Below, piece by piece: positions 4,695-63,727 of a stretch of DNA of 64,000 nt. Source of the stretch: Euprymna scolopes (Eukaryota); assembly GCA_053919585.1 (NCBI GenBank), contig CM132783.1, one strand, 5' to 3'. Positions within the stretch are counted from its first letter, which is position 1. Every line of letters starts with the position of its first letter. The notes under the pieces were generated by a model, which saw only the letters and a list, made by a program, of their open reading frames with translations, did not search any database and was not told the DNA's origin. A program made the translations under genes and the position numbers.

Positions 4695-4725
4695 CAGCCA
4701 AAATTGTGATGATTTTTGTTGCCAT
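4695..4725 (-). CDS. suckerin: Suckerin paralog (gene 0), first coding exon: signal-peptide start MATKIITILA(G); downstream exons not found in window
   Basis: Reverse complement reads tttcacag|cttattaatctacagaagtc-ATG GCA ACA AAA ATC ATC ACA ATT TTG GCT G|gtaagt. This is the same 31-nt phase-1 coding segment as gene 1 (MAAKIITLLA) and gene 2 (MSAKVITLLA). Exon spans ~4695-4745. Confidence 0.85.
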
Positions 4726-5611
4726 GACTTCTGTAGATTAATAAGCTGTGAAATAAACAAATAAAACAATGCTTTTAGTATTTTAGCTTTTAGTATCTAT
4801 TTCGAAAAATGTAAAACGTGACTTCTGTTAAATCCTTCAACGGATGGAAATATTATACAGTTTCACACATGAACATACAATTACAATTAGAGACAAGAAT
4901 ATTATACGTTACAACATAACCGATTATCTTCCCCACACGGTTTAATTCTACATTAAATATAGACTCGAAAAATATGAATAAAACTCTTAACTAAAACATT
5001 CGTCAAAATTTACTTGAAAACTGTTATACGCTGGACAGTTCAATGAGTGATTTTGTTAACTGATTAAACATTATGCTTATATAGGATTGACAATCGATCC
5101 GAATAAAAAAAATGATTTAAATCATGCCGTGCGACTGATTATGATATTAAAATATATATTTAAGGTTTTGCTATTAATTTGAAAACTCACATTAGGAGCC
5201 ATTGCATGTTTATATCTGCCTTTATTGCATTTTTCTAACTTAGATAACAGTTCGGATTAGCACCGACTTCGCTTCGATAAATCCGATGAAAAATTACTAA
5301 AGGAGATGTTCCGAACGAAAGCTATTTAAAAAAGGTGAATTTAATTAAACATTCGACATTTATAATAGAATTATGTCGGTTATTAAGAAATATCCAACTC
5401 GCTAGTTATTATAGATTAAATATTGTTTTTTAATTTAAATCTTGATTATAACTTGATGTAATCTCTGATAAAGATATATTTCTTTTAATAGAAATGTTTT
5501 TTCTACTAAAGTGTACATGCTTCAGGGCAGTTTATATATTAAATTGATCTAAACAATTTAATGAAAATTTAAAACAAAGTAGAATTGAAGAAAAGGAATA
5601 TGAAGACTTAC

Positions 5612-5653
5612 CAGAAATGGATAGTCACACGAAAATTGAGCAAAGCGGAGACT
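5612..5653 (-). other. Gene 0 non-coding exon 1 (TSS approximate)
   Basis: Minus strand aagtctccgctttgctcaattttcgtgtgactatccatttctg|gtaagt aligns with gene 2 exon 1 (agtctctgctttgctcaacctttgagtgactatccatttccg|gtgagt). Confidence 0.75.
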
Positions 5654-5850
5654 TCGAAAGGAAGGTTCGCGAGCTGGCTTTTATAGCAAACAGTTAGACA
5701 CATTCTGGAAGAACTGCTTTGAAAATAAATCTTTTACGATTGAGCCTGAAAACCAAAATAACTACAGGTCGTGGGAACAACAGGGTGTACCTTTATTGAA
5801 TCGTTTATTATTAATTGTTATCTTAATTGACCAAAAACTCGTAGATTTTA
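5654..5850 (-). promoter_or_regulatory. Gene 0 core/proximal promoter, TATAAAA at 5685-5679
   Basis: Minus strand ...cacgacctgtagttatt...tattttcaaagcagttcttccagaa...tgtttgcTATAAAAgccagctcgc, homologous to the promoters at ~14130-14301 and ~57485-57674. Confidence 0.8.
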
Positions 5851-6598
5851 AATAAATTCAATTGTTTCTTTTTAAGGTATTCTTTCATTAACATTTAAAT
5901 GTATGAAGGAAAATTATAAAAAGAGAGACGATCGGTCAAAATTAGTGCACGCGTAACAATATAGCTTGTATACGCTCGATGACGTAACAACATCTAAAAA
6001 ATTAATAATTGTTTCTATCTGTTAAGAAAAATTAAATATAGAACGTGTTGACCAATTCACCGTACATACGCACTCGGCAACTACGGAATCCACAACACGG
6101 CAATGCATGTTATAGCAATGTTATTGCGTACTATGTTTGTATTGCCTTCTCTATTGAAAAATTGCTTAAACTTCCACGATAGAAATAAATATAATGATAT
6201 TATTGTGAATCTGTTACAGCATTCTCCCCGGTGGTTTGAGCCAGCTTCAAAAGAAGGTTTTAGCGTTGTTTCGCAAGGCGTTCATCCATATCCATGGATG
6301 ATTTTTTTCAACGCATAATTGTCACGCTTTTATAATCAAATGCAACTTCTAACTTAGTTGAGACAAGTCCACAGCCGACCCGGAAATGGATCCGAATTTA
6401 TTGCCTCGTTTATCTTTTTCTGATTTAATACTTTTACATAGAATCTGCCAGATAAGACAAGCTTATACCTACTGAAGCTCAAAAGAATTTTAAGGAGATA
6501 CTCATTCGGGCACATTAACTCCTTCCCTCATAGCTATTGAGCGATGGGATTATTTTCAAACCGGTTCGTATGTGGAAGAGTACATCTCGCTCTTTTTA

Positions 6599-7149
6599 TC
6601 TATACATTAATGGGATAGCGTGTGTGTTATTTTTGTATGTCACGCTTACATCAGAGTGACTGTCGTTTGATTGTTATTGACTTCCATTTCTTATAATAAA
6701 TAATTTTACGAAGAATTCTCCATAAGTTTTGGTTTCGGTTTCGATTATAGCTGATGGCACTCCAGTAATCTATTTATTGTAAATAATTTATCAAGAATTC
6801 TTCATAATTTTNNNNNNNNNNNNNNNNNNNNNNNNNNNNNNNNNNNNNNNNNNNNNNNNNNNNNNNNNNNNNNNNNNNNNNNNNNNNNNNNNNNNNNNNN
6901 NNNNNNNNNNNNNNNNNNNNNNNNNNNNNNNNNNNNNNNNNNNNNNNNNNNNNNNNNNNNNNNNNNNNGTTTGCCTTCGATTCAAGCTGATGCACCGAAG
7001 TCATATGAATATTTTTTTTTTTTTTTGAAATCGCAACTTTATGATATATAAGAACCTTAGCTCTGTTATAATATATACGAAATGTGCAAGAATGAAAATA
7101 TCGTTTAAAGCATTCTTTACGACCGGGCTACGCCGGGCGTCTCTGCTAG
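6599..7149 (+). mobile_element. Non-autonomous Helitron-like element (contains N gap)
   Basis: Starts a|TCtatac, carries internal ~85-bp repeats, ends gaccgggctacgccgggcgtctctgCTAG. Confidence 0.45.
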
Positions 7150-7559
7150 CTTACGTGCTTTTGCAGTTTAAACAAAATAGCTACAATAATATCAGAGCGT
7201 CTCCATTTACGCTGAATATCTACAGAATGCCAACATCAATATATTAAAATACGAATGAATCGTTTGCGGAACTTTCACAGTTTCTGCTTTTTTTTTCATT
7301 TAAGTAATGTGCCGTTTTTGCTTTTCATTCATTTTTAAGTGTCAGACAGATTCCATATTTTTGTTGAAAACTAACCTAACATATATGAATGTTATATTTC
7401 TTAAACAAAATGAAAAGTATTTTAAAAATACCGTCTGCTTTTGTACTCCATCCCTCTTCTTTTTAGAATTGCTATTCGTGGGAACTGCCACGCCATTTAT
7501 TTCTCCAATGGTTGACAAAGATAACACTGGGAAACAACTTGTTTCTTTTAATGTTACCT

Positions 7560-8800
7560 AGATTTCTACGGCTCATTCGGTTTATTTTAGCATTGCTGAA
7601 TGGAAAAAATTCACCCGTTTTCTCCTCAGCTAAGGATTTGGTGCTAAGTTGATTTTGAAATAAATCAGATCTTGTGACAAAATTGATTACATTTTTGTGG
7701 CATTATCCGCAGAATTTAGTCAATATATATCATCCATGTTTTTAATAAATAATCTTTTTGTCAACAGTATATATTATTACCTGGTAGAAACATCTATTAC
7801 TGTAAATTGAATGGTGAGCATAAGTAAATATAAGTACACGCTAATTGTTTGTCGCTTCAACATTGTTCAAACTTCAGGGTTTAAATTTGTTAGAACTCCT
7901 GAGATTATTCAACGGCTTGAAGGTATCTCTTTAGATTCTGACAGTAGTCAGCCATCATTATTGCGTTCCAGTAATACTGATATATTTTCCCCTCTCTTTC
8001 AGATCCTGATGGAATCTCTCTTTTTCTCGTCACTCATTAAACAAAGGTTCTCAGAAAACGGATCCACATTTGAAAATCTTGACGATCATGTTTCAGCCCA
8101 TGTTTCTGAAATCAGTCAACATTTTGCTGACAAGTTCTGCGTAGTTTCTGATCTTGATATTGCCAAAGCATTCTTACTACCAGCACAAGTACTTTTCTCG
8201 TTTCCAATGAGTACCAATTTTTTTTAAGATTTCGAAGTTTTATGGCATCATCCTCATCCCTTTCCAACATAATCACCCAGAATTATCAGACCTGAATATA
8301 TCTTGCCATTAAAAGAATCATTTCCAATCAAAATAATTATTCAACATAGATTTTTACCTCCACCAGCTATTTAAATGCTTTACATATGCGTAAATGTAAA
8401 CAAAAACATGCAAAACGACATGTAATCATAGTTCAAAAAGAAATTACGTGACTGAGTAACACTAAATGTTCTTTTCGGATTCAACGCGTCGGATTCGCCT
8501 TAAGTCAGTTGTAAAATGCAGAAGAAAAAAACAAAATTTGTTGTTGACGAATGCAATTTTTTCCCTCATTCTATTTCTGCTTTTTCTCTCTAACCATCTA
8601 TTGACTTCTTCCATAATGTTTTCTAATCATAATATGACAATAACAAAAAAGGACTGGTTTAATCCCAGTCCTCTAAATGCTAAAATAAAGCCTCATTAAC
8701 ATATCGCCATTTTCAAGTATCAATCTTTAGCTTACAGTAGACCAACATATTCTTTCTGTACAAAGTTTACACTGAAGATTTCATGATTACAATAAATTTG
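7560..8800 (-). mobile_element. Chapaev3-like (CMC) DNA transposon remnant
   Basis: Minus-strand broken frame ~8180-7930: FGNIKIRNYAELVSKMLTDFRNMG*NMIVK...ENL..MSDE..RFHQDLKE...YQ..W...MMADYC, matching the Chapaev3 motif SDEHGERFHQD..RYQG..MLADYCW. Outer limits approximate. Confidence 0.62.
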
Positions 8801-8864
8801 TATCAATAACTGACCTTCGAGATTACAACATCATCGTGATTTAGCTTACATTCGTAATAGCTTC

Positions 8865-9160
8865 CCAAATGGAGGGATATCTCCCCTACTCTTTATCTGT
8901 GCCTAAATCAAAACCTGGATTCCATGAACAAAGCTTCTTTCTTAGAACTGCACGCCTGTGGAACTCTGTTTCGTCTGCCTGCTTCCCACCTGACTACAAC
9001 TTGGATGTGTTCAAGTCCAACGTTAACAAATTCCTAATGAACCGCCCCCTTAAGTAAATACTTCATCAAATCTCCACACTAACGTAATGCACTTCCAATA
9101 ACCCTTATGCCTGAGTGGCTTCCGGGCCTTGATAAGTGGTGACCACTGTGTAAAAAAAAA
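8865..9160 (+). mobile_element. CR1-group LINE 3' end (ORF2 C-terminus, 3'UTR, polyA)
   Basis: SFFLRTARLWNSVSSACFPPDYNLDVFKSNVNKFL, then 3'UTR and A-tail. Confidence 0.8.
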
Positions 9161-9299
9161 TCTCCTAAACTGGCCCACATGTATTTCAGCGTAACACTTG
9201 CTCTCATGTTATCATGATTGTTAAGTTATCAAGAACCTCAGCGCCAACCAGAGAACGGGCCATAAAAGCTTTTCTATCATAATCACTAAGAAACTGCAA

Positions 9300-10250
9300 C
9301 AGGAATTACCTCTAATTCTCACAAAGTTTTTATGCTGTAGTTTATAAAATAAGGTTTCACATCATGTTGGAAAGCATCATTAATTTTTCCAGTATTTAAA
9401 ACTACAACTTCCTTTGCTCTACTATTTATAAATAAGTTGTCTGAATCTGTAATAATCAAAAATGTTTTTATGTACCTCAGCAATGACAATCTACTCCGTG
9501 AAGTGATATCACACAAAATTAGTGAATCTTTTGATGGGGAGTTTATTTCTTGCGCAATAGCTCCTGATATATCAAAGGCCTTTAGTAAGGTTTGAAGCAA
9601 AAGTCTGTTTCACTCGTTTGTGAGCTATGGAATATCTGGAATTCCCTACTAAACCATAAAACCTTTTCTCTGTGATAGGTTTATAAAAGTAGTTGTTCAA
9701 GGTCAGAAATCTGAAGTTATTTGTTTCATCGCAAGCGCGCACTAAAGATTAAACACACTTCCTATTATTCATCAATGACTTTGCACATTACATTCTAGGA
9801 TCATTTTGTGGTATATCTGAAGGTGACACAATCATTTTATTAGAGTATTTCGAATGACATAAAAGATAAATATATTTTAGCTCTTTTCCGACTTGGATTA
9901 CGTGATAGAAAAAAAAAGTATCTGCTTACTTTTAATATATCTAAATCAATTTCACACACAACACTCAAATTTTCACGTTCCCTAGTTTAAATGAATGAAG
10001 CTCCATTTAAGGAGTGATCAGTTTTCATGATCTTCTTGACCTCATATTTGACGTGAAAGACTTATATGAGATATGTTAGATCATTCAACTGCTCTAGAAA
10101 GTAACTAACTCATAAAAAGATCCTCCACCTAAATTAAAACCTGATGCAGCCCAAGATAGAATACTGTGGCCACATCTAAGAAGGTGCCGCTGAAAAATAA
10201 CTCAGTGATCATAATATTATATAGGTTCAACGAGCACTTTTCAGACTAAG
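9300..10250 (+). mobile_element. Old CR1-group LINE reverse transcriptase remnant
   Basis: AIAPDISKAFSKV, SYGISG, LLFIND and QPKIEYCGHI motifs, with stops and frameshifts. Confidence 0.68.
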
Positions 10251-11347
10251 TTGTTAATAATAAATAATAAGAATATATTATATACACAATTTGACTTAAA
10301 AACCTAAAATGATGTTATACGTCGAAATTCGGACGAGATATGATATGTCGACAGTTGGTTGTCGTCAATGACCCATTTCGGTACATCGATGTTATTGCTA
10401 AGTTCCGCACGAGTAGTGAACCATAACGATTACACATGAGTGGCTGCTGAATGAATAGCATCAATTATTTCTTAGTGGTTACGCGTTTTAGAGTAAGGAT
10501 GAGACCAGTCATTCTTTTGCTGAGCTGCTTTCATATGTTAACACATCTGAATCTTTGGTCAAGGAGAAGTAAATACATACATCACTACAATGGAGTACTA
10601 TAACAAAATAACCATCCACCATTAACCTTTGGATCGAGATGGATGTATTACAATAAAGAAGAATATTTGTCGAGTAAATATACAATGAAACGTTTCGCAT
10701 GTCGGACATGCCTATCTGCCACGTTCATAAAAATCTATTTACAATCGTAGACTTTTATGGGGGGATTGATCTGCACATAGGAATAATTTTTAATCTGAGA
10801 GAACGAACTGATTCGAATGAAAAGCAGTAAGATGATATTAAGATAGCAAAGAAGAGTTAGTTGTTCAAAATCGTTATTCGAAATACTATATCATATAAAT
10901 GCGACTGTATTATATCGTCGGTTAGCGGAATTTTGTTACACCTTCAAATAATAAAAAATATAACGTCGCTTGTGAAGATAGGTTACCAACTAAAGTTTCC
11001 AAGACTGTCAAACAACAGAGCGAAATAATTGAAGCGGCTCAATAGTGCGCTAATTAAAACATACGATAGGTGAGTTTGAAACAATTATAAAATAAGTCTA
11101 ATATATATTGCTTCGAGAATTTTCGCAATTGTCTTCCATCGACATCCAAGAGGAAGCGTGTAAATAACATTTGACATAATCAATGAAGCGTCTACTGGGA
11201 GAAAAATCGTGCCGACTAAATATTTATATGCTTAAAGTATTGGAGCAACGCTGGTGCTCTCAGCCTTGTAAGCTAATTATAAGACACAAATTTGCTAAAT
11301 TTCAATCAATGCCTACAGTAAGTATATCAAACACAAAATTAGGGTTA

Positions 11348-26130: not shown

Positions 26131-27657
26131 CTTTGTTATTTTTCTTTTTGAAATATTTATTTTTTTCCATGACATTGTTACAAGCAAAAAATAAATGACT
26201 GTTTTTAACGAAAGGCCAACGAGCATATTTAGTTTATATGTTTAACGTTATATTATCTCTTTGGTCGAAATCGAATTTGTGTTCAAAATTATCCAATGTT
26301 ACTGACTAATTTACATTATTTATTATGTCATTCATAGTTCAGCCAAACTTTGTGTCTGTAATTTTCTCAAATTTGCGCATCAGAAGACCTGATCAGATTT
26401 AAATTTTCTATGATAATATTTATAAGGTCAATAAGACATCAAGCAAAAATAAAACCACAAATTATCTGTTGGCTAAATGGCTTATTTAGTTATTTCTATC
26501 CGGGTAAATACTTAACTCTGTATAATTGTAGTTATAAATATTTACAAATATTACGTCAGCATTTAGAGTTTAAACTCATACATTTGTTTCAGTTTTGTGT
26601 ATTATTTATAACTAGCATGACCCCTAAAAATTTCACAGAGTGAGAAATATATTGAATCAATAAATACATGTTTCTAAATAATGCAAAACATTATTTTTAT
26701 ATGCAGAAAATCTAATAAAACGTAGCAAATATGAGTTTATTAAAAATGTCCATGAAAATAGTGTTTATTGTATTTGACACATAGAACTGCCCCAAATGAT
26801 ATAAATTAATAAATACTAATAAATACCCCGATTATAATATTGTACTGTGTAGTTCAATGCAAATAATACAATCATATTGTAAGAGCCAATCTTTAATTCA
26901 CACCGTCAATCTAGTACCTCTTGGCAGACAATGTCTTCGTGTTTCTTTTTCTTGAAGGGATGGGCGTTTCTTTATAATTTTTTCTTATATACGTAAGATT
27001 TCGCTGAATTCTTTTGTCGATAAAGAACTGCTGCAAGTCTAAATTACTAGGAATTAATTTCTCACACAGTTACAACAATGATCATATATTATTATAATGA
27101 CATTCGAAAACAAAGCTACATCAAAGAGAGGTTAATCTAACATTTTTGTCCGCACTTGCTAGATTGTAATTTTTTTAAGACAACTTTCATGATTTCGGTC
27201 TTTATGTTAGCAATTTGAAATTCAAAAATTGTGTTCTGTATTTTTAAAAGTATAACGTATAGATTAACTGAGGAAGGACAGGCAGAATTGTTTATAAATT
27301 AATGATCATCAACATAAAAGAGNNNNNNNNNNNNNNNNNNNNNNNNNNNNNNNNNNNNNNNNNNNNNNNNNNNNNNNNNNNNNNNNNNNNNNNNNNNNNN
27401 NNNNNNNNNNNNNNNNNNNNNNNNNNNNNNNNNNNNNNNNNNNNNNNNNNNNNNNNNNNNNNNNNNNNNNNNNNNNNNATTCAAGCATGCGTAAACAAAA
27501 GCTTGTTCACTCTAGAAGTCTGCTCAAGATAAAAAGTAAGAATTTTGTTCTGAAATATGTGACGTAAGCCCTAAGAAGCTGACATTAAAGTTAATGCCAA
27601 TCATTAAATGTTTCGTTGAAAAATTCTAAAGTATAAAAACAAAACAAGTACAAATGA

Positions 27658-42737: not shown

Positions 42738-45700
42738 ATGGCTCTAAGACAGTTTGACCTCCGACTCATCGCCGAGTTTAGTGGCGCAGCAACTGACGTT
42801 TCAATAGTAGAATGGCTAGAGGATGTAGAATTTACGTGTGAGCTGTGCGAGGTAACCTAGGTGGAGCGAGTACTGCCGCGTCGGCTGAAGGGTGCGGCTC
42901 GTGAGAAGTATCGGCAACTCTCGGAGGACCAACGGAGTGGCCTCGAGGAAATCAAGCGTGCCCTTGTAAAGGCTTACGGGACGGATTCGTTTAAACAGTT
43001 CACCGCCCGCCGCCTTCGGCCAGCGGAACCGTGGATGAGTTTTTGACGGATTTGCAGCGGCTAGCACGTCTGGTAGATGAAATGCCACCAGAGTGTTGAA
43101 TAAAGGGAGCCTTCGTGAATGGATTGTCATGCCATGCAAAGGGACGTTCTCAAGCCTCAACCCGAATGGACAGGCTGTCATTGAAAGAGCTGTTTCAGAG
43201 GGTTCGTGCCGTTAACTGCTTCAGATGCGGGGGCCCAAACCATTGGGCCCGTGATTGCCTTTCGTCGCGGTCAACAACCCAGAATCCTAGCGGACCGCGG
43301 TGTCACAAATGCAAAAACTGGGGAGGAAGTTACAGCGCCAGTCTTCTCCCCAGATCGTCATTAAACAAGGCGCTGTCTGCGGTGAGCGTACGTGTTAACG
43401 ACGTGAGTGCCACGCGCTTGTGGACACGGGTTACATCCAGACACTTGTGCGCAAAAAACGTTGCGACACTTGGAAAACGACAAGAACTCTTTTGCGTACA
43501 GTAGTCGAGAGCTGGTTGTCCTCTTGCGGAGAAGGTATCATCCACATAAGCATCGGTAGCGGCCCTGAAGTAGCCGTGCAAGCTCTGATTATGGACCGGG
43601 AGCTACTTGGGTACGATTTACTCTTAGGAATGGACGCAATTGTGCAGCTGGGTGGAGTCGTAGTTGATGGAGCCGGAAACGTGACGTTCTCCCAACGCGA
43701 AGAGTGCGTTTGCGCGACACTCACCCTAGATAAGCCTGATTGTCGTGCGGAGTGCGACCAGTGCACGAAGTCCTGGACTGTGGCTTCGAAGTGGTCGGAC
43801 GAGCAACCGCCAGAGAATTTTTTCAATACAGTGCCAGAGTACAAGATTTACCCCGGAGCTTGTGTAGGGAACTACAGACCTTGATCGACAGTGGATGGCT
43901 CGTTCCTTATATTGAGAAGGCATTGAGGCCTCCAAAGTGTTTAATCCCACTAGTGGCGGTCTTCTAGCAAACAAACAAAAAGTGACGCCGGTGCTCGAGT
44001 ATTGGGAGTTAAACAAATACGTGGACCCTTTTACGGCCCGCGCAGACCTTTACGCTGATAAATTACAGGAATAGCGGCAAGCAGGGTCTAATGTGTGCGT
44101 ACTTGATCTTCGGAAGGCGTACCTTCAAGTGCGTGTACACCAGTTACTATGGCCTTATCAGACAGTTCTGGTTAAAGAGAAGAGATACCGCTTAACCCGT
44201 ATAGGGTTCGGACCCAACGTGGTGCCATCAATTATAAAAACGATTTTTAACACCATTCTGGCTCAAGAGGAGCGCATAAGGCAGGCAGCATCTGTATATA
44301 TTGATGATGTATACGTGAATGAAGGGGTTGCATCCGCGACGCGTGTAGACGAGCATCTCCGCAACTTTAGACTTCTCAGTAAGGAGTCAGAGATAATACA
44401 GGATGGCGCACGGGTGCTCGGTTTACAGGCCCGGAGAGAAGACGGCGTCCTACATTGGAAACGGGGAAATAAAGTCCCAGACATGCCCCACGATGTCACG
44501 CGAAGAAACGTATTTTCTTGGTGCGGAAAATTGGTTGGACACCTACCTGTGGGCGGCTGGCTTTGTGTTGCGGTGGCGTTCATAAAGAGGAGAGCGTCTG
44601 AGGTAACTACTGGATGAGATGATGTGGTACACGACGCCCCTCTCAACACAATTCTGGAGGAAGTCCTCTCCAGTGTGCGAAAGGAGGACCCTGCACGGGA
44701 CAGATGGTGCGTCGACAACCGAGACCTGAGTTTCGGGTTGATGCGAGCCCTCTTGCTACGGGCGTATCAATAGTCCTTGATGAGGCCGTGGTGAACAATG
44801 CCTGCTGGTTACGCCCAGAACGGGACTCCCAGGATATAAACCTGGCAAAGCTTAATGCCGTCATCAAAGGGATAAACTTGGTGATCGTCTGGAAGTCGAC
44901 TACCCTGCGGTTATTTACATATTTTGCCTGCATCCACAAGTGGATTTCGGACACCCTTACTGGGAGGGCCAGAGTACAAACTAAAGCTACGAGCGAGATG
45001 CTCATCCAATGGCGGCGGCTTGATACCATCATGAGGATCAAAAAAGAATATGCGCTGTCAAAGGAAATCTCCCTGGTCAGGTCCAGCCTGAACAAGGCCG
45101 ATTGTTTAAGAAGAGTTCTCCGCAGATAGATTGAGGCCACAAGAAGAACCATCGAACCCATACAACCGGCCTGCGCCGCAGCCGCGTGTTCTGCTCAGTT
45201 TGATTGAATCAATGAAGCCCTCCACCAAATTGGACATCCAGGGGTCAAGCGGACCTTGTATTTTGCTAAGGTGGATGACCCTGAAGTACGAAAAGCAGAC
45301 CTTAAAAGAGCGGTTGAGAGTTGTGTGTGCCAATCTATCGAACCGGCACCCGTTCGCTGGGAAAAAGGAAACTAGACGTAAAGAGCCACTGGAGCCGGCT
45401 GGCGATAGATGTTACTCACCACGACGGCGACAATTACATAACACTCATTGACTGCGGCCCATCTAGGTTTGCGATATGACGGCCGCTCCGCCGGCAAGTT
45501 ACGGCAGCACTCATCCGTCAGGCAAACTGCATCTTCTTCGAACATGCCCTCCCAATGGATATACTAACTGACAACTGCACCGCTTTCACCAGTGGACAAT
45601 TCAGAAAGTTTGCCGATGGATGGTGAGTAAATCTGCGGTTTCGATGTGCCTACGTATCGAGCGGGAATGGGATTATTGAGCGGAACCACAGAACTGTCAA

Positions 45701-46050
45701 AACTATTGCCGCGAGAACGGCCTGGGCGGTTTCTGAAGCAGTTTATTTATACAATATTACCCCAAAGGATGCTGTATCACCCTCTACAGCGCCGATCGAC
45801 ACATTGTACAGGTATAACGCTAGGGTGAAGAACATAGAAACGAACCCAGTACCTGAGATGAAAGTAACTGGAGGGAGGCTGGAAAAAGATGTTGTCTGGA
45901 TCAAAAACCCGCGCGGTAAATGTACGACTCAGTATGGACTTGGACACATCACTGAAGTGATCAGCAAGCAAGCAGTGTGTGTCGACGGTGTGCCCCGTCA
46001 CATTAACACTTACGACCGACAACACACTCGCGGCTACCCGTGAACAAAGG
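42738..46050 (+). pseudogene. gag-pol of the Gypsy element, with multiple stops and frameshifts
   Basis: Gag FDLRLIAEFSG..VEWLE; CCHC knuckle CFRCGGPNHWARDC; protease ALVDTG; RT LDLRKAYLQ...YIDD; RNase H VDAS; integrase HQIGHPG..C.VC, D(VTH)-D(NCTAF)-E(RNHRT). Confidence 0.92.
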
Positions 46051-46288
46051 GAGCGAGTCTGACTCCGAGTCAGGGACCAGTGAGACATCGCTCTAGTTCA
46101 CAGCAGCTCCCCCAGAAGGTGACTCTGATATCAGTAGCCTCTCAGCGGAAGCGGTATTCTTCAACCCCCACTTCGCGGACGATAGCTTAAGCGATGAAGA
46201 GGCATGTATCGTTCCCCTTCGGAGAAGCACCCGGCGACGGCGATCACTACCCCATTGCCATTTCTGTGATCACGAGATCAGGAGGGAA

Positions 46289-49150: not shown

Positions 49151-49198
<48 letters not shown>

Positions 49199-49199
49199 T

Positions 49200-51559: not shown

Positions 51560-53075
51560 GTTCTCACGAAACTCTACAACAAATGCCTTAATGAAGCTTG
51601 CTTTCCAGGCTGTTGGAAAACTGCTTCTGTTGTACCAGTATTCAAGAATTCTTGCGATAGAACTGACCCATTAAATTATCGCCCTATTAGCCTCCTCAAA
51701 CTTTTTGCCAAAATATTTGAGACCTTAATTAACCATGCTCTAGTCCAGCACTTTACAGATGCTAAACCTCTGACCGACAAATAATATGGATTTAGACAAG
51801 CCCGTTCCACAGCAGACATCCTCACTGTAATCTCTGAACGCATATACGATTCACTGGACAAAGCGGGAGAGGGCAGAGCGGTAGCTCTAAATATATCTAA
51901 GGCTTTTGACAGGGTATGGCATGAGGGTCTCCTCAGGAAGATTAGATCATACGGTATCACTGGTTGAATACTTAACATAATTAAATCCTTCTTAAATAAG
52001 AGAAAACTCCAGGTTGTCCTCAACGGTCGTACATCTAAACAATATGATATAAATGCGGGAGTGCCCCAGGGATCTATCCTTGGACCTCTACTGTTCCTGA
52101 TATTCATAAATGACCTCCCCGGCAAAATTGCCTCTGAGATAGGTATATATGCTGATGACACCACACTCTATAGCAGGCACGACAGGAAAACAAATGAACA
52201 TATATATAAAGTACTGGCAGATACACTAGCGAATGACCTCCAATCAGTAGTGGAATGGGGACAAAAATGGATGGTCACGTTCAATGCCGCCAAGACTAAA
52301 CTGGTTTCATTCAATAATTACAAGAAACCTTCTCTACTACCTATAGCAATGGCCAACGACTCTTTATCTGAGAGTACGTCTTTCGAGCTCCTTGGCCTAA
52401 CGTTCACAGGAAACATGAGGTGGAACAATTACATCGAAGGCATTGCCAGAGCCGCTGCAAGGAAGGTGGGCTCTCTCTACCGTGCTAGACAACTACTAAC
52501 ACCAGAAAGTATCCTGTACCTCTATAAGGCAACCATTCGCTCATGTATGGAGTATTGCTGTCATATTTGGGCTGGTGCATCGGTTAGTAGTCTATCGCTC
52601 CTTGACAGGGTTCAAAAGAGAGTCGCAAATCTGATAGGCCCTTAACTGGCTACTAAGCTTCAGCCTCTGTCCCATCGACGAAACGTTGCATCCCTCTGCC
52701 TGTTCTACAAGTATTTTAATGGTGAATGCTCTGATGAACTGCAAGCACTTGTGCCCCCACGACGTGAACACCCTCGACAGACCCGACAAGCTGCAAAATC
52801 CCACCCCCACACTGTAGAGATCCCTAGATGTAAAAGATCTTTCTACTCCGGTAGTATCTTCCCCAGAACCGCTAGACTTTGGAATTCCATTCCAGGTCAC
52901 TGCTTCTCCAACTGTACTGACAAAAGTTCAAGTGCAACGTGAACCAACATCTTTCTGCCCAAATCTCTACATAGTACCCCAGTAGTTGTTTCCCCTGATA
53001 GTATCCTCCTACACCAAAGTGGCAATGTGCCTTGTTTCGGGTGAAAATGTAATAAAAAAAATAAAAAAATAAAAA
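51560..53075 (+). mobile_element. 5'-truncated CR1-group (CR1/L2/Crack-like) LINE with RT domain and A-rich tail
   Basis: NYRPISLL, YGFR, ISKAFDRVWH, VPQGSILGPLLFLIFINDL, YADD, MEYCCHIW, LSHRRNVASL, RTARLWN. In-frame stops present. Tail aataaaaaaaataaaaaaataaaaaa. Confidence 0.93.
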
Positions 53076-54967: not shown

Positions 54968-55052
<85 letters not shown>

Positions 55053-56544
55053 AAGGAGTTTATCTCCGTATTATATTTCTTAAAAAATAAACACTCGTTT
55101 ATTTTATAAAAATTTCGCGTTGCAGTTATTTGGCTTCAAATGTGTTCAATACGTATCTTATTTTGGTTTCAAATTTCACTCAACGCTTCTAATGGATATA
55201 AACAAAAAACTACTCTATGTTATTTTATATTATTTTATGAATTATTTTCCTCTTTTCAAAATGAATAATGTAGAAAGAATCTTGATATATTTTTCTGAAA
55301 TATATGTCAGTGTTTCATTTACCTTTACATTTTTTGTCATTAATTTCACTATTCTTATGCATCCTCATATCTTTCAACTCAAATTACTAAAATACTTTTG
55401 ACTGAAGATAACTAAGATATCCGAATATATTTATCTCTTATTAAAGTAAACGTAGTTCTCCGCCTGCGGTCATTCTTGCGAGTCGCCAGTGGCAGAATAG
55501 CTTGGTGAAAGACAATGATATGACCGTGGATAGACGGAACTGCGGGTCAACGGCGCACAACCACCGGTAAACGTCACGTGGCATGCTATCATCTTCAATA
55601 TATGGATTCAAAAAGCACTGAACATATTTTTATAAGAATTTTACCATAACTAGAAGTTATATGAAATATAATAAGCTATGTTTGATATGTTTTCTCAGGG
55701 AAGCAACGGAGCAACACTTAAAAATAAATGTATCTACTAATTACAAAACTTACTTGGTGTAAAAGGGATTATTTTAATAGATCATTTAAGAGAAGCAAAT
55801 CCACTATTTGAAAAAATACATACACATAAAAATGACACTTTACAAAGTGACACTTCAGTTTGTTTTTACATTATTATAAAAGGACTACTTCATAGTGGAA
55901 TCACTTGGTCATCGAGTATGTACATTTAGACATATGTGTAAATGTATCTGTAATATAATACATCAAGTTCTGGCGTCAATAATTATTGGCAAACTGTTTC
56001 ATTCTAAATAAAGCAGACTGTTATTTAGAGAGATTTACGGAAATTGTATGAGATCATTAACTTATCAACAACGGGTATCAGCTTATAAGCAGAACCTTGT
56101 CAAGTACACAGGGACAATCATCAACATTTTTTTTAGGAAATCTTTCACGAGTTTGAAAAAGATTAATCTTCTACATAGTTCAAAACTGCACTTTTCGGTG
56201 CAGTGTAGTAGAGATTAATTATAAATGCTTAATAAAAAGTATACATCCGTCATTCTTTCCATCTCAACAAGTCGCTATTGATCTGAATTTTTATGAAGAA
56301 TTAAAATATGTTGACACACATTTACAGCCATGGGACAAAGAACCGAAAAAATAGTAATAAAAATCTGCAAGTAGGGTTGTGCACTCTACCGTTTGTCACT
56401 AAACTCATAACTAAAACGCCAAATACGTTGAAGCTTTGTTTTTACAATGTTATTCTCTTGTATATTATTTAATTGGAATTCATTATTGAGACGAGTATTA
56501 TTAATTTACTTATTGCAGACTATTATCCTCATCTTTCTTAGTTG

Positions 56545-56599
56545 CTGTTTTACGACGTTTCAGCCAACTATTCCTCTGGCCATCTTCAGGTGGTAACAG
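56545..56599 (-). ncRNA. Minimal PLE-type hammerhead ribozyme motif (inverted copy)
   Basis: Minus strand cac-CUGAAGA-u-ggcca[gaggaauagu]uggcu-GAAA-CGUC-gua. Confidence 0.58.
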
Positions 56600-56707
56600 C
56601 GGCGGGATGGAGACTTACTTGGCCAAAACGTGGTGAGACGACAACAACTATGGATGGCAGTAATTGCTGAGAATGCAGTTAGGAGATTCGCAGTTCCTCT
56701 CCCGTCG

Positions 56708-56763
56708 CTGTTACCACCTGACGAAGGCCAGAGAAATAGTTGGTCGAAACGTCGTGAAACAAC
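56708..56763 (+). ncRNA. Minimal PLE-type hammerhead ribozyme motif
   Basis: cac-CUGACGA-a-ggcca[gagaaauagu]ugguc-GAAA-CGUC-gug: both core boxes, 5-bp helix II, palindromic ACGU helix III, GUC cleavage triplet, short cac/gug helix I. Confidence 0.6.
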
Positions 56764-57484
56764 AACTAAGAAAAATGAGGATTAATAGTCCGCAATAAAT
56801 AAGTTATTCTATTATTTAGAAATTGCCAACATATCTATATTGGAAATGTTAGTATTATCAATTATTGCAGGGAGAGTACAGTGGCTTGACCACACTCATC
56901 GCCAGTTTTAAACACACCTGATTCATGATATTACTGTGCTAGCGCAAAATAGAATAGAGAAAATCAACTAAAGACATAAATTGCGATGGGTAAGATTGAC
57001 ATAAGATTGTAGACGGTTCGCGAATGTTCGGCGTTTTGAAATGTAATTGGAACAAACTGAATCGATAGTTTTGAACGAGGATTAGTCGACTTGAGAAATT
57101 ACACTGTAAATTCACTTACAATCGACTTAGTTAATCTTACACATACCCATGTTCAGACTCATCTTCTCAATCTTTCCGTGGTGCTTTTGGACGACAAACA
57201 TTGTACGTGATTAGATGTATACCCCATTGATAGTGAAAGTACCGATAGTTCTAGTTTTGTGTTTAATTATTTTCCCAAAATAGCCCGTATAAATACAACG
57301 ATTATTCTTTCGTTAATGTGTCGTAGCCTCATTAACCAGATAAAATCCCTATTATTAAGCACTTGCCTTACTGACACCTTGAGAGTTTTTTCTTCTTGTT
57401 TTATTCTTTTCTCCTTCTTATACTTAAATAATGTCAATGGCGTTGGTGTCGTGCGAATAGATATTTAAATTTATTTAAAATATA

Positions 57485-57674
57485 AGGGATTTTGTGTCAA
57501 TTGACAAAATAATTTATATTAAACAATTAAATGAAGATTCACAATGTTATTTCTCACGACCTGTAGTTATTCCAGTTCATAATCTCCACCGCAAAAGATT
57601 TATTTTCAGAGCAGTTCTTCCAGAATTGGCTGATTTGTTTGCTATAAAAGCCAGCTCGCAAATCTTCCTATCGT
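57485..57674 (+). promoter_or_regulatory. Gene 2 core/proximal promoter, TATAAAA at 57643-57649
   Basis: gtcaatt...cacgacctgtagttatt...tattttcagagcagttcttccagaa...tgtttgcTATAAAAgccagctcgc, shared with genes 0 and 1. Confidence 0.8.
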
Positions 57675-57716
57675 AGTCTCTGCTTTGCTCAACCTTTGAG
57701 TGACTATCCATTTCCG
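57675..57716 (+). other. Gene 2 non-coding exon 1 (TSS approximate)
   Basis: Starts ~30 nt after the TATA box, ends in canonical donor ccg|gtgagt at 57717, conserved in all three paralogs. Confidence 0.75.
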
Positions 57717-58964
57717 GTGAGTCTTCGCATTTTCTATCATTTATTTTTTTTGTATCAAATTGTTTAAATCTACTCTAATTTGCAGTATCAAAACTTTAGT
57801 AGAAAATATTTTTCAATCAGAAAAATATATCTATTTCTCAGAGATTATGTAGATATATAATTAAAGGTATAATTAATAAATACTATTCAATCTACAATTG
57901 CAAGTGGGTTTGACAATTCTTAATTTTATCATACATAATTTTTTAACAAATTTTAGATCAAAATTTAGTATGTAGAATTAAAATACATTGAAGTATTAGA
58001 AGAATTTCCGTCGCTTATTAATTCCTGAATGTTTCAGAGCAACGCTAGTGCAAACTGAAACTATCGTATTCGTTAGGAAAAAATAGAAAATATGGTATTC
58101 ATAGTTTTATAATGTTAAGATATTTTTGTTACCTAATACTCTATTGCATGCTATTGTCTAAGTTCCTTATTATACTGGTTGTCCCATCTAAATTGCATTT
58201 TTAAATAAATTCTTATCATGCTTCATATAAATGTTATTGCGTTATTTTACAATTGTTTAACGTCATATTATGATTACATTTAATGCGTCAACTGTTACTA
58301 CGACTCAAACAATTAGTGAAAGCAAACTATCATATGATGTAGAATAATTATTTCATTTTATAAAAAAGATCATAAAGTAGAACTAGAACCATCTGTACGC
58401 ATCGATAAAATAGGCACAATGTTTTCCGAGTCAATTTTCAACACATTAGGTATAATTACAATATTGAGTCTGTTCACAGTAACAGACGTTAAAAATATTA
58501 CAGTTTTCAAATCCAAATTTGTGAATATGTATATTTACGCGTTTTACTAATCATACTAGATTTTATCATTATCTAAAATAATAAATGCTCATTTTTTTAT
58601 TCTTGGTTTTAGGGGGTTTAATCAATAATAAAGTGATACTACACCCGTTGTGGTATTACGCCTGACTTATGCGCTGTGTATTTCTCGTTGTGCGTGTCAT
58701 TATATAAAGATCCATGAGTTTAATGATGTGTAATAATTTGTTACTCGGACATCGTAATTAAATGAGGAATTTAATGAGATCAGATTAAACATATATCTCA
58801 TCTAGGTAAATGATGTATGTAATTTTAAAATTACATGTTTTCTTGTGTGAATTTGTTGTAGAATTTGTTTATTTAAAAAGTCTAACCGGATTCGTGTTTT
58901 ACAATTTTAAGATAAACGTTTTATTTATTTATTGTTTCATAGAGTTCCAATCAACCAATAAAAC

Positions 58965-58995
58965 ATGTCAGCGAAAGTCATTACCCTTTTGGCAG
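58965..58995 (+). CDS. suckerin: Suckerin gene 2, coding exon A (MSAKVITLLA-)
   Basis: Acceptor tttcatag ends at 58942, aaacATG at 58965, donor G|gtaagt at 58996. Confidence 0.9.
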
Positions 58996-59934
58996 GTAAG
59001 TACCTCATTATTTACATTTTTATTTGTTTGTAGAATATAGCAACTGCAAGCGTACAAACACTTATAATATTAGGACGGTTATGATCAAAATATGAATAAT
59101 ATTAATACGACTAAAATGACTATCACAAACCTAAACTCTCTCCTTGTGGAATGCTTAATAGTGGGTCTACCTTCCAACTGACCACAATATAGTCGTCTAA
59201 AAGTCCAATGTAAACAAGTTCTTGCCCAACTCTCCCCTTAAATTATCAAATTCTATCCAATTTACACCACTACAGATCACTACGCTGTTGTCTCACTGAC
59301 AACTCATTAAGCCGTATCCTCGAGTGGTGTTCATGCCGTGATAAGCGACGATTTCTTTTGTTAAAATATAACCGATGATACTTTTTTGACAAAGAAAACT
59401 CATCCTCTTTATTCGAAAAAGCACTTCAATAAACATCCGAACAATTTCATTTCATCTATCGCAATGAATAGATAATTCTTAATAAATGCTTATTATATTG
59501 AAAAGTGATTCTTAAAAAATATATTTAAATATATTCTTGAAATAAGCCAGTTTATTATCATAAATGTATTATTATAAATAGTGTTATTATTATTATTATT
59601 ATTAGTAGTAGTAGTAGTAGTAGTAGTAGGTATAGAGTAATAATTATTGTTTTTCATCTCTTTCGACATAATAGTGAATTGATTAAATTTAAATATTGAA
59701 TTACTTATTTTTAATCTTACTCTTATCGGTGTCAGTGTCTCTTTACTCCAGAAACAAATTTAAATAAGCATTAATATTACTGCTACTTTATTCGTTCTCT
59801 GGGTAACCTGATCAGTGTTTAGTTAGTAGTAATATTTCGATAACAAAAGGAATGGTTGAATACCAGAATAAATGTGACTGAAGCGGATTTGCTATTTAAA
59901 TATAATATATTCATATGAAAATATGTATCAGGAA

Positions 59935-60652
59935 TGTTTTTTTTACTCACATTCAAACAAAGCATATCACCACTTGACCGCAAGGAGGTTCTATTTGGAA
60001 CCATGCCAAGGAAAGTTTAACAAGAGGTTGTTTTAGATTTAAACTTGTGCATATCAGTACAGTAAAGCTGCTAGCATGAAGGAAATTCCAGTCAAGCTAT
60101 TCGAGGGAATAAACTATTAGAATAGAAAGCTTTCTGGAATCTAAGGACCTCAACAGGTAAGGGGTGAGATTTTATTACTAAGCCGGTTTGTCAGGGATAT
60201 GTACGTTGAGGGGACATAAGTACAACGAGTTCATCAGAGTACATTCCAGTAAAATATTTGTAAAACAGGCACAGAGATGCAACATTGCGACGATGGGACA
60301 GGGGTTGGAGCTTAGTTTACAAAGTTAAACCTATTTAATTGAAAACTACTTTTTGTACCCTATCCAAGAGGGATAGTGGTAGATGTACTAGCCATAATGT
60401 AAGGAAAATACTTCATGCATGGTGAATGGTGGCCTAATGGAGGTACAAGATACTCTCATGTGTGAGTAGTCTCTTAGCCCGATAGAGGGAAACCGCAATG
60501 TCCTCAATATATTTGTTTATATTACCCGTGAATGTTAAGCCGAAGAGTTTGAAGGAAGAATTCTCATTATGTCCATTATCCCTTTTTTCTTCTTAAAATT
60601 AAGTCCCTCGCTTTGTACACAATAATGCATTTCATTATTCATGCCTGGGAAC
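59935..60652 (-). mobile_element. CR1-group LINE 3' portion in gene 2 intron 2 (runs into N gap)
   Basis: Minus strand LSHRRNVASLCLFYKYF...FYSNSLFPR; same family as 51560-53075; T-tail at ~59935. Confidence 0.82.
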
Positions 60653-61235
60653 NNNNNNNNNNNNNNNNNNNNNNNNNNNNNNNNNNNNNNNNNNNNNNNN
60701 NNNNNNNNNNNNNNNNNNNNNNNNNNNNNNNNNNNNNNNNNNNNNNNNNNNNNNNNNNNNNNNNNNNNNNNNNNNNNNNNNNNNNNNNNNNNNNNNNNNN
60801 NNNNNNNNNNNNNNNNNNNNNNNNNNNNNNNNNNNNNNNNNNNNNNNNNNNNNNNNNNNNNNNNNNNNNNNNNNNNNNNNNNNNNNNNNNNNNNNNNNNN
60901 NNNNNNNNNNNNNNNNNNNNNNNNNNNNNNNNNNNNNNNNNNNNNNNNNNNNNNNNNNNNNNNNNNNNNNNNNNNNNNNNNNNNNNNNNNNNNNNNNNNN
61001 NNNNNNNNNNNNNNNNNNNNNNNNNNNNNNNNNNNNNNNNNNNNNNNNNNNNNNNNNNNNNNNNNNNNNNNNNNNNNNNNNNNNNNNNNNNNNNNNNNNN
61101 NNNNNNNNNNNNNNNNNNNNNNNNNNNNNNNNNNNNNNNNNNNNNNNNNNNNNNNNNNNNNNNNNNNNNNNNNNNNNNNNNNNNNNNNNNNNNNNNNNNN
61201 NNNNNNNNNNNNNNNNNNNNNNNNNNNNNNNNNNN
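60653..61235. other. Assembly gap (other gaps: 4032-4200, 6812-6968, 20118-20287, 27323-27478)
   Basis: Runs of N. Confidence 1.
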
Positions 61236-61346
61236 TCCTTTTAAATATAAATTAAATCTTAAACATATATAAACACACATCAATAAATGATACGAGTAAA
61301 GCAATGTGATAATATATTTTAATTACTATTTTCTTGTCTCTTTCAG

Positions 61347-61385
61347 TGATTGCTTTCAGCAACTACGTATCTGCCGTTCTTCCAG
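61347..61385 (+). CDS. suckerin: Suckerin gene 2, coding exon B (VIAFSNYVSAVLP-)
   Basis: tctctttcag|tgattgctttcagcaactacgtatctgccgttcttccag|gtaag, 39 nt, phase 1-1. Confidence 0.92.
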
Positions 61386-62292
61386 GTAAGCATCATCACT
61401 GTTTTATCTATCTGTATAAATGAAGACATTTTAACAATGATAAACTTGCAATGTGACTTGTGCGTATTTTTCCAATGTTATTTTGATGCAAATAAATCGA
61501 TCATAAAATAAGTCTTAACTTAGTCAATTTTTTATCGAGTATATGTTAAGTGTTTATATTTGATTATCACTGCTTAAGTAATTAACTATTATTCCGTGCA
61601 CACAATGAGTGTTTTCTTATAAATATATTCAGCTAAAATCATTAGACAATAACCACATATGATTTTTGCTAAACATTCGAATTGGTTACCGTGTTATGTG
61701 TTCATATTTTTACGCAAATCATGTATCAACTGCAGATTTTTTAAATGAAGACAATTATTTGTACTTGTTTATTGTAGAAACACAGCTTTAATTTTACATA
61801 ATCTCCAGAAATAGTGACTGACGTTTCAATGTTATCCTAAACTCAATGCAAAATAAATATATGCTCAAATACAGAAAATAAATACATTCCGAATATGTTC
61901 AATACCGAGAATTCTTTTTTAATAAATTCAACAAAAAGCATTACATAACGTTCCAATACTATTTGAAAAACAAATTTGATTTAGTCACTGCATGTGTGTC
62001 TACTTTTACGCAGATCGCGTACTAAATGCTATCTTTTTCAACGTTGAAAATGTTTATCTTTTGTTCATAACTTTTATTGGGCGAATAAAAGTCATTAAAT
62101 ACTAAATTTAATTTAATTTTCAAATAAAAGTTTAAATGTTGAGAATTGCATTTGTATAAAATTAATCACTTCTAAAATTTACGATAAGTTACCGATTTAT
62201 TTCTTAAGTATTTGTTCTTACATCGATTGTTTTAAATCAAATTTGGGGAGAAAATATTTCAACTTTACAATGTAAATATTTCTTCTTCACAG

Positions 62293-63053
62293 CCGCTACA
62301 ACCGTCAAACAGACAACGCATCACAGATCATATGGATATGGTGGTTTGGGATACCCAGTTGGATATGGACTTGGCGCCACTTCTGTAAGCACACTCCATC
62401 ACCCAGTCGGATATGCTGGATTTGGTCTTGGACTTTACGGTGCAGGATATCCAGCAGCAACTTATACCCACACAACTCATCATGCTCCATACGCATATGG
62501 TGGTCTCTATGGTGGATATGGACTCGGTCTTTATGGTTATCCTGCCGCCGCCGCCGCCGCTACTGTAAGCACAGTCCATCACCCAGTTGGATATGCTGGC
62601 TTGGGTTATGGTTTGTATGGTGCGGGTTTCCATTACCCAGCAGCAACTTCTTATAGCCACACCACTCACCATGCTCCATACGCATACGGTGGTCTTTATG
62701 GTGGATATGGACTCGGCGTCTATGGTTATCCTGCTGCCGCTTCTACTGTAAGCACAGTCCATCACCCAGTTGGGTATGCTGGTTTGGGTTATGGTTTGTA
62801 TGGTGCGGGATATCACTACCCAGCAGCTACTGCCTTTAGTCATACAACTCACCATGCTCCATACGGATACGGTGTATATGGTGGATATGGACTCGGCGCC
62901 TTCGGCTATCCTGCTGCAACCTCTGTAAGCACAGTGCACCACCCAGTTGGATATGCTGGATTCGGTCTCGCAGGTTATGGTTTCGGGTACCCAGCAGCTA
63001 CATCTTACAGTCATACCTTGCATCATCCAGTTGGAGCCTTCGGATATTATTGA
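62293..63053 (+). CDS. suckerin: Suckerin gene 2, main coding exon (9 Ala/Thr/His modules alternating with Gly/Tyr modules); full precursor 276 aa
   Basis: Acceptor cttcacag| is in frame with exon B and the track ORF 62346..63053. Reads AATTVKQTTHH..., PAATYTHTTHHAP, PAAASTVSTVHHP, GGLYGGYGLG. C-terminus HTLHHPVGAFGYY is identical to gene 1. Confidence 0.95.
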
Positions 63054-63727
63054 ACATGATTTACAGATAGATATTCTTCAACATCAAATCTGTAAGTAAC
63101 AAATATGTATATTACTTACAAAATATTTCTAATACAATTTTTAAATATATGCAAAACTTTTCATAAATTTCACAAAATGTTTTCAGAGAGCTGTTCGTTA
63201 TGAAATCGAGGATCCTATCAATAATAATGTTAATATAATAAATGAATACGACTATATTACTACGAGTAAAGCAATAATATACCACTATTACTATCTAGAC
63301 TATCTAAAGTATCTCTAATGATTATAATAATAAGTAACTAAATCTTATACAATTCTATTCTCCATATACTGTATATTGCTGCTGTGTATCTGATGAACGC
63401 ATATGCCGCAATATTATTGTATCATAATTTTACAACGTGAAACATATTCATCTAAATGATCTAGATGTAATTTCAAAATAAATCTGACTAAATGTGTGTG
63501 AGATATTTCAATTCTGTAGACATCTGGCGCTAACGCAACCTCCACAATATTATAGTGCTATCTTTGGATAAGAAAGATGCTACTAGCAATGACTGAGAAA
63601 ACAAAAAAATAAAATATACATGATTTAAATTACATTTTTTCATTGCAGCGTGGTCGAGCAGGCAATTACAATATTTAAAATGTAGAGAAGATTAAAATAT
63701 ATGAACGGAGATAAACTTGCCTTAGTG

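What the first reader, a model, noticed from the sequence alone, without database searches (positions are those of the whole stretch)
4695..63091. Suckerin gene cluster: three paralogs with a shared split-exon architecture
Seen: two complete genes and the 5' end of a third. Genes 1 and 2 are built as TATA promoter, ~42-nt non-coding exon, 31-nt ATG exon, 39-nt phase-1/1 exon, one large exon holding the whole block-copolymer domain, then a 3'UTR intron. Gene 0 matches this as far as it is visible (promoter through ATG exon). The mature proteins have no Cys, Asp or Glu and strictly alternate TTHH-type and TVHH/TLHH-type beta-strand modules. Established: these motifs define suckerins, the beta-sheet-reinforced thermoplastic proteins of squid and cuttlefish sucker ring teeth, which are known to be clustered. 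Inference: these particular isoforms, which an ORF scan cannot assemble, may be unannotated and are natural length variants useful for biomaterial design.
Basis: partly seen in the sequence, partly recalled or inferred. Interest (0 to 1): 0.85.

Follow-up and report, generated by a model that had tools for sequence, protein, structure and literature searches.

The report
Three clustered squid suckerin genes
The window holds two complete genes and the start of a third for suckerins, the known structural proteins of squid and cuttlefish sucker ring teeth; the predicted splicing of one gene is confirmed by RNA data, so the finding is correct but is an ordinary member of a known, clustered family.

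Summary
Gene 0 is only a promoter, a non-coding exon and an ATG exon. It lies on the minus strand, head-to-head with gene 1.

For gene 2, RNA contigs from three studies carry the joints 57716|58943, 58995|61347 and 61385|62293. They also leave the genome at 63091, so the 3'UTR intron is real and its acceptor lies outside the window.

Three things support them:
- paralogy with gene 2;
- 18/24 N-terminal identity to the Sepioteuthis suckerin-1 protein across both junctions;
- its large exon being present in polyA RNA runs.

The only database relatives are named suckerins. The [Pro-M1-Pro-M2]n design is met, and dN/dS is about 0.15.

All assembly gaps fall in introns or intergenic DNA.

Corrections:
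- The ATG exon is 52-53 nt, of which 31 are coding.
- The module alternation breaks at the C-terminal cap.
- The transcription start site is unmapped.

Suckerin clusters are already published (Albertin 2022). These two isoforms are absent from the protein collections searched, and I found no paper describing the exon layout. Verdict: new members of a known kind, of modest interest. The same scan noted related sub-findings on this window.

The parts
5678..5685 (-). Gene 0 TATA box (TATAAAAG) inside the conserved promoter block (about 5871-5358)
5612..5655 (-). Gene 0 non-coding exon 1. The donor at 5612|5611 is read from the sequence; the start is inferred as about 30 nt after the TATA box
   Evidence: TSS not measured
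4695..4745 (-). Gene 0 exon 2: 5'UTR plus ATG at 4725, encoding MATKIITILA, phase 1, donor GTAAGT. The rest of the gene is not in the window
   Evidence: acceptor at 4745 set by analogy with genes 1 and 2
14276..14283 (+). Gene 1 TATA box
14306..14343 (+). Gene 1 non-coding exon 1 (donor 14343|14344; start inferred)
15134..15185 (+). Gene 1 exon 2 (ATG at 15155; 31 coding nt; phase 1)
23540..23578 (+). Gene 1 exon 3, 39 nt, phase 1/1, second half of the signal peptide
24496..24961 (+). Gene 1 exon 4: whole repeat domain, stop codon at 24921-24923, 38 nt of 3'UTR, then donor GT at 24962
57643..57650 (+). Gene 2 TATA box
57673..57716 (+). Gene 2 non-coding exon 1. The last 23 nt and the donor at 57716 are seen in an RNA contig; the start is inferred
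58943..58995 (+). Gene 2 exon 2 (ATG at 58965)
   Evidence: joints 57716|58943 and 58995|61347
61347..61385 (+). Gene 2 exon 3, 39 nt, phase 1/1
62293..63091 (+). Gene 2 exon 4: repeat domain containing 3.2 copies of a 183-nt tandem unit, stop codon at 63051-63053, 38 nt of 3'UTR, then the donor. The terminal exon lies beyond 64000

Best explanation
These are three paralogous suckerin genes of a decapodiform cephalopod, part of a suckerin cluster.

Gene layout. Each gene has a TATA promoter and a short non-coding exon. The signal peptide is split over two small exons (10 codons plus 1 base, then 39 nt in phase 1/1). One large exon encodes the whole mature protein. An intron follows 38 nt after the stop codon.

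Protein and function. The products are secreted, with inferred cleavage after ASA or VSA at residue 20. They are built of Pro-flanked Ala/Thr/His-rich M1 modules and Gly/Tyr/Leu-rich M2 modules. By the published model, M1 modules form nanoconfined beta-sheets and M2 modules form the amorphous matrix. Together they self-assemble into the non-covalent thermoplastic network of sucker ring teeth.

Length variation. Length differences arise by gain or loss of a 61-aa double module inside the single repeat exon.

Shown here: the exon structure of gene 2, transcription of genes 1 and 2, homology to suckerins, the modular design and purifying selection.

Inferred: signal-peptide cleavage, tissue of expression, material function, the transcription start site and gene 1's junctions.
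For: - The frames assemble with GT/AG sites.
- RNA contigs from three studies carry the joints 57716|58943, 58995|61347 and 61385|62293, and diverge at 63091.
- Gene 1's large exon is held at 0.71-0.89 of its sampled words by many RNA runs, including polyA libraries.
- The only significant relatives are suckerin-1 (S. lessoniana) and suckerin-7 (D. gigas), plus one unnamed suckerin-like protein and two weak unnamed matches (P0004, P0005).
- The N-terminal 24 aa are 18/24 identical to suckerin-1.
- Module parsing gives P-M1(10-13 aa)-P-M2(16-17 aa), 5 times in gene 1 and 9 times in gene 2. Composition is Gly 21%, Tyr 16%, Ala 13-15%, His 9%. This matches the definition in PMC9999432.
- dN 0.06 and dS 0.40 between genes 1 and 2.
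- A shared promoter and exon-1 block in all three genes.
- Published suckerin clusters (PMC9068888).
Against: - Gene 1's junctions and all of gene 0 lack direct read evidence.
- Run names and tissues are coded, so sucker-specific expression is not shown.
- The M2 modules are shorter than the 20-30 aa quoted as typical.
- No SignalP-type prediction was available.
- No Pfam model exists to test against.
- Database similarity is partly driven by biased composition, although it persists with composition correction.
Confidence: 0.93

Rival explanations
1. The genes belong to another Gly/His/Tyr-rich structural family, such as histidine-rich beak proteins or cuticle-type proteins, and only resemble suckerins by composition.
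For: The composition is strongly biased, no Pfam family is available, and E-values are only 1e-9 to 1e-14.
Against: The named hits are exclusively suckerins. The non-repetitive signal peptide is 18/24 identical to suckerin-1. The Pro-flanked M1 motif of the AATxxSHTTHHA type is the suckerin signature. Beak HBPs are described there as built of Gly/His pentapeptide repeats.
Confidence: 0.03
2. Gene 0 is not an intact third gene. It could be an orphan 5' fragment, or its 2.6-kb contig could be misplaced or flipped by scaffolding, since it is bounded by gaps at 4032-4200 and 6812-6968.
For: Only the promoter, exon 1 and the ATG exon are present. No exon-3-like or repeat exon occurs anywhere else in the window on either strand. 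The contig is flanked by gaps on both sides.
Against: The ATG exon keeps an open frame, a phase-1 GTAAGT donor and a conserved promoter. Intron 2 is 2.35 kb in gene 2 and 8.35 kb in gene 1, so exon 3 may simply lie beyond the 4.7 kb available. RNA contigs show further paralogs elsewhere in the genome (loose end at 61344).
Confidence: 0.15
3. Genes 1 and 2 are alleles or haplotigs of one locus duplicated by the assembler, not true paralogs.
For: The assembly is gapped and repeat-rich. The C-terminal 137 codons are about 88% identical.
Against: dS is 0.40 and the length difference is 111 aa. The introns are unalignable and the genes are separated by 33 kb of retroelement-rich DNA. The two genes also retrieve different sets of RNA runs.
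Confidence: 0.02

Closest known systems
Suckerin-1 of Sepioteuthis lessoniana (UniRef A0A081DU96, 138 aa; P0002)
   Same: The signal peptide is 18/24 identical to gene 1's, including the LPG junction residue. It has the same P-M1-P-M2 design, small size, and TTHHAP and STVH(R/H)PVGY modules.
   Different: Identity is only about 47-57% over the aligned parts. The number and order of modules differ, and its C-terminus lacks the TLHHPVGAFGYY cap.
Suckerin-7 of Dosidicus gigas (A0A075LWS6, 177 aa; P0003)
   Same: Its N-terminus, with the signal peptide followed by ILPAATSVSRTTH, parallels gene 2's VLPAATTVKQTTHH. M1 motifs are shared.
   Different: The Dosidicus protein has GGLYGGYGLHHGG-type M2 repeats and a non-repetitive tail that are absent here.
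Suckerin gene clusters of Doryteuthis pealeii (13 genes in two clusters on chromosome 2) and Euprymna scolopes (16 genes), Albertin et al. 2022, PMC9068888
   Same: Tightly linked paralogs of a decapodiform-restricted family that are highly expressed.
   Different: The main text of that paper, and the supplementary passages that mention suckerins, give counts, gene identifiers, location and expression only. They do not give the exon layout, the shared promoter block or the 3'UTR intron. Whether this window is one of those clusters cannot be told, because the organism is coded.

Membership tests
Suckerins (sucker ring teeth proteins) | Significant sequence similarity to named suckerins and not to other families | tested here: met
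   the top named hits are suckerin-1 (S. lessoniana) and suckerin-7 (D. gigas), E 1e-9 to 1e-14. One search shows the similarity persists with composition correction. There are no Pfam hits.
Suckerins (sucker ring teeth proteins) | [Pro-M1-Pro-M2]n block design: M1 of 10-15 aa rich in Ala/Thr/His (AATAVSHTTHHA type), M2 rich in Gly/Tyr/Leu with GGY and GGL, n = 3-13 (PMC9999432) | tested here: met
   M1 is 10-13 aa between prolines, n = 5 in gene 1 and 9 in gene 2. M2 is 16-17 aa and contains GGLYGGYG, somewhat shorter than the quoted 20-30 aa.
Suckerins (sucker ring teeth proteins) | N-terminal secretion signal | tested here: inconclusive
   There is a Lys at position 4, a hydrophobic core over residues 5-16 (mean Kyte-Doolittle 2.2) and ASA or VSA at -3 to -1. 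Homology to known suckerin signal peptides is clear. No dedicated signal-peptide predictor was available.
Suckerins (sucker ring teeth proteins) | Expression in sucker or tentacle epithelium and presence in the ring-teeth proteome | not testable with these tools
   Transcripts are present in many RNA runs, but samples and tissues are coded. No proteomics was available.
Suckerins (sucker ring teeth proteins) | Genomic clustering of paralogs in a decapodiform genome | tested here: met
   Three paralogs lie within 58 kb. Further paralog transcripts are seen as loose ends. The organism's identity itself was not revealed.
Histidine-rich beak proteins | C-terminal Gly/His/Tyr/Phe/Ala pentapeptide repeats and similarity to DgHBPs | tested here: not met
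   No HBP appears among the hits. The repeat unit here is a 61-aa double module, not pentapeptides.

The most novel reading that the evidence does not exclude
The five-exon layout may be the ancestral suckerin gene plan: a non-coding exon, a signal peptide split over two micro-exons, the whole repeat domain in one exon, and an intron exactly 38 nt after the stop codon (too close to the stop to mark the mRNA for nonsense-mediated decay by the 50-55 nt rule). The roughly 250-bp promoter block shared by all three paralogs may be the cis-regulatory module that drives very high expression in the sucker epithelium. Keeping all modules in one exon would let unequal exchange add or remove 61-aa double modules without touching splicing, which would explain the family's length diversity.
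Probability: 0.45. Interest if true: 0.4.

Novelty: new member of a known kind. Interest (0 to 1): 0.3.

Why it matters
Suckerins are studied as recombinant thermoplastic and biomedical materials. Nearly all work uses a few Dosidicus and Loligo sequences derived from transcriptomes.

This window adds two verified natural isoforms of 145 and 256 mature residues. They have no Cys, Asp or Glu, and they differ by exactly two double modules, which makes them a clean natural pair for testing how module number affects properties.

The exon map and the shared promoter block give a starting point for gene annotation, since ORF finders miss the two micro-exons, and for reporter constructs in squid.

None of this changes what is known about the family.

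Tried and rejected
- I searched for gene 0's remaining exons in the window by DNA pattern, tblastn and six-frame motif scans. None were found.
- I searched for gene 2's terminal 3'UTR exon using the 30-nt continuation of the RNA contigs. It is not in the window.
- The Pfam scan of both repeat domains gave nothing.
- The Rfam scan of the whole window at gathering thresholds gave nothing.
- The exhaustive HMMER search of 1.84 billion representatives gave only 5 hits and no closer relative.
- Literature searches for a description of suckerin exon/intron structure found none in the held library.
- I considered reading the promoter block's roughly 70% identity as proof of constraint, and toned this down. 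It equals what dS = 0.40 would give neutrally. The argument for constraint rests only on the introns being unalignable. The similarity between gene 0 and gene 2 runs 235 nt into intron 1, which suggests it partly reflects recent duplication.
- I could not identify the organism; its names are coded.
Full report
**What is in the sequence**

An ORF scan shows two long open frames full of Gly/Tyr/Ala/His/Thr repeats, at 24501-24923 and 62346-63053 on the plus strand.

- Gene 1 exons: 15155-15185, 23540-23578, 24496-24923.
- Gene 2 exons: 58965-58995, 61347-61385, 62293-63053.

Every junction has a GT donor in a good context (GTGAGT, GTAAGC or GTAAGT) and a pyrimidine-rich AG acceptor. The phases agree: 31 nt leaves phase 1, and the 39-nt exon is phase 1/1.

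The ATG exon and the 39-nt exon each occur exactly twice in the window, with none expected by chance.

**Gene 0 and the promoters**

A self-comparison of the window shows that the third copy lies on the minus strand.
- Its ATG exon is at 4725-4695. It encodes MATKIITILA and has a GTAAGT donor.
- Its promoter block is at about 5871-5358.

An alignment of the three upstream regions shows a shared CTATAAAAGCCAG TATA element: three matches against 0.14 expected. It is followed 67-73 nt later by a conserved exon-1 end, GTGACTATC..TTC.G|GT: three matches against 0 expected.

No further suckerin exon exists in the window on either strand. The rest of gene 0 must therefore lie left of the window, or else gene 0 is a fragment.

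**Assembly gaps**

The gaps are at 4032-4200, 6812-6968, 20118-20287, 27323-27478 and 60653-61235.
- None touches an exon, so frame across a gap is not at issue.
- The gap in gene 2's intron 2 is bridged at RNA level (see below).
- The gap in gene 1's intron 2 is not read-tested.
- Gene 0 sits on a 2.6-kb contig with gaps on both sides. The head-to-head arrangement is therefore only as reliable as the scaffolding.

**RNA evidence**

Many RNA runs of the source organism hold gene 2's large exon, at 0.87-0.94 of its sampled words. I laid four runs on 57600-63590. The contigs of three independent studies gave these joints, all GT..AG:

| Joint | Runs |
|---|---|
| 57716\|58943 | X1 |
| 58995\|61347 | X1, X5 |
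| 61385\|62293 | X1, X5, X9 |

In all three runs a contig leaves the genome at 63091 and continues for 110-120 nt with sequence that is not in the window. So the 3'UTR intron is real and its acceptor lies beyond 64000.

The first joint shows that the 'ATG exon' begins at 58943. It is 53 nt long with a 22-nt leader, not 31 nt.

Only the last 23 nt of exon 1 are covered, so the transcription start site and the '~42 nt' figure remain inferred.

Loose ends at 61344 and 61387 carry an ATG exon and a repeat-exon start that differ from gene 2's. The ATG-exon sequence at 61344 also differs from those of genes 0 and 1. Additional expressed paralogs therefore exist elsewhere in the genome.

The raw-read run X21 had no suckerin reads; its tissue is unknown.

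Gene 1's large exon is nevertheless held at 0.71-0.89 by many RNA runs, including polyA libraries.

**Identity**

Word-indexed and exhaustive HMMER searches found the following:
- suckerin-1 of Sepioteuthis lessoniana;
- suckerin-7 of Dosidicus gigas;
- one unnamed suckerin-like protein;
- two weak unnamed matches in the exhaustive search (P0004, E 1.6e-06; P0005, E 4.9e-04).

Pfam has no model that matches.

The non-repetitive N-terminus gives the most telling comparison. Gene 1's spliced first 24 residues are 18/24 identical to suckerin-1, colinear across both splice junctions including the LPG codon that spans the exon 3/exon 4 junction. Gene 2 begins its mature part with LPAAT..TTHH, like suckerin-7. 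This independently supports gene 1's junctions.

**Protein design**

Splitting at prolines gives P-M1-P-M2 units.
- M1 is 10-13 residues of the AATSYSHTTHHA or AAASTVSTVHH type.
- There are five M1 modules in gene 1 and nine in gene 2.

This matches the published definition [Pro-M1-Pro-M2]n with n = 3-13 (PMC9999432). The M2 blocks are shorter than the typical 20-30 residues.

TTHHAP-type and T[V/L]HHPVG-type modules alternate, except at the C-terminal cap. There an xVHHPVG module is followed by TLHHPVGAFGYY. 'Strictly alternate' is therefore slightly overstated.

The mature proteins have no Cys, Asp, Glu or Trp. Gene 1 has two Lys as its only charged non-His residues; gene 2 has one Lys and one Arg.

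The signal peptide has a Lys at position 4, a hydrophobic core, and ASA or VSA before VLP. Cleavage after residue 20 is inferred, not computed with a dedicated predictor.

**Relationship of the paralogs**

Gene 2 equals gene 1 plus 111 residues inserted after the signal peptide. Its repeat exon contains 3.2 copies of a 183-nt (61-aa) unit at 82% identity.

Over 165 aligned codons there are 33 synonymous-only and 19 amino-acid differences. That gives dS 0.40, dN 0.06 and a ratio of about 0.15, so both copies are under purifying selection.

Between the two genes, DNA similarity is confined to four places:
- the promoter and exon-1 block (321 nt, 70%);
- the ATG exon;
- the 39-nt exon with short flanks (88%);
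- the repeat exon with the 3'UTR stub and about 60 nt of the following intron (88%).

The rest of the introns does not align. This suggests constraint on the promoter, but 70% identity is also what dS = 0.40 predicts neutrally. The similarity between gene 0 and gene 2 extends 235 nt into intron 1. The footprint is therefore suggestive, not proven.

In both genes the 3'UTR donor lies exactly 38 nt after the stop codon. By the general 50-55 nt rule for nonsense-mediated decay this is too close to mark the mRNA for decay. That is an inference from general knowledge and was not tested.

**Surroundings**

The 33 kb between genes 1 and 2 is filled with degraded retroelements:
- zinc knuckle, reverse transcriptase and DUF7047 at 43.1-45.1 kb;
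- reverse transcriptase at 52.06-52.65 kb.

It also contains AT/TA microsatellites.

**Comparison with what is known**

Suckerins were defined from transcriptomes and proteomics of Dosidicus, Sepioteuthis and Sepia (summarised in PMC9999432).

Their genes are known to sit in tight clusters: 13 in two clusters on D. pealeii chromosome 2, and 16 in E. scolopes, restricted to decapodiforms (PMC9068888). The supplement passages returned for 'suckerin' list gene identifiers, chromosome and tissue only.

In the held literature I found no description of the exon/intron plan, the shared promoter or the 3'UTR intron. A 2025 review of cephalopod material proteins does not contain the words exon, intron or signal peptide.

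**Verdict**

This is an ordinary part of a known gene family in a known kind of arrangement.

What is new is limited to:
- two isoform sequences absent from the protein collections searched;
- an RNA-verified gene model;
- a candidate promoter module.

Noticed in passing
window 60000-60600 (gene 2 intron 2); related copy at 13574-13676: RNA contigs and polyA reads pile up here (word depth 110-240), with many loose ends at 60285 and 60291 leading into unrelated sequence. It looks like a transcribed dispersed repeat inside the intron, not a suckerin exon.
   Followed up: partly
window 62451-62840: In all three RNA contig sets one contig joins 62451 to 62840 with 25 other letters in between. It is probably a shorter, closely related paralog or a de Bruijn graph shortcut through the repeats, not a spliced isoform.
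   Followed up: no
window 61344 and 61387 (loose ends): RNA contigs attach a different ATG exon (ATGGCAGCAAAAACCATCACACTTTTAG) and a gene-1-like repeat-exon start (TTATTGGG) to a gene-2-like 39-nt exon. This points to further expressed suckerin paralogs outside the window.
   Followed up: no
window 56502-56806: A 305-nt stretch that is 74% self-complementary (a palindromic inverted repeat) lies about 0.85 kb upstream of gene 2's TATA box. The Rfam scan of the window at gathering thresholds found no ribozyme or any other RNA family.
   Followed up: partly
window 42800-46100 and 51600-52900: Degraded retroelements lie between genes 1 and 2. One is a frameshifted gag-pol-like element (zf-CCHC, RVT_1, DUF7047) in a GC-rich island (46-50% GC against about 30% elsewhere). 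The other is a separate RVT_1 fragment.
   Followed up: partly
window 24921-24961 and 63051-63091: In both genes the 3'UTR intron donor lies exactly 38 nt after the stop codon, and the sequence of that stub is conserved (about 81% over 130 nt including the start of the intron).
   Followed up: partly
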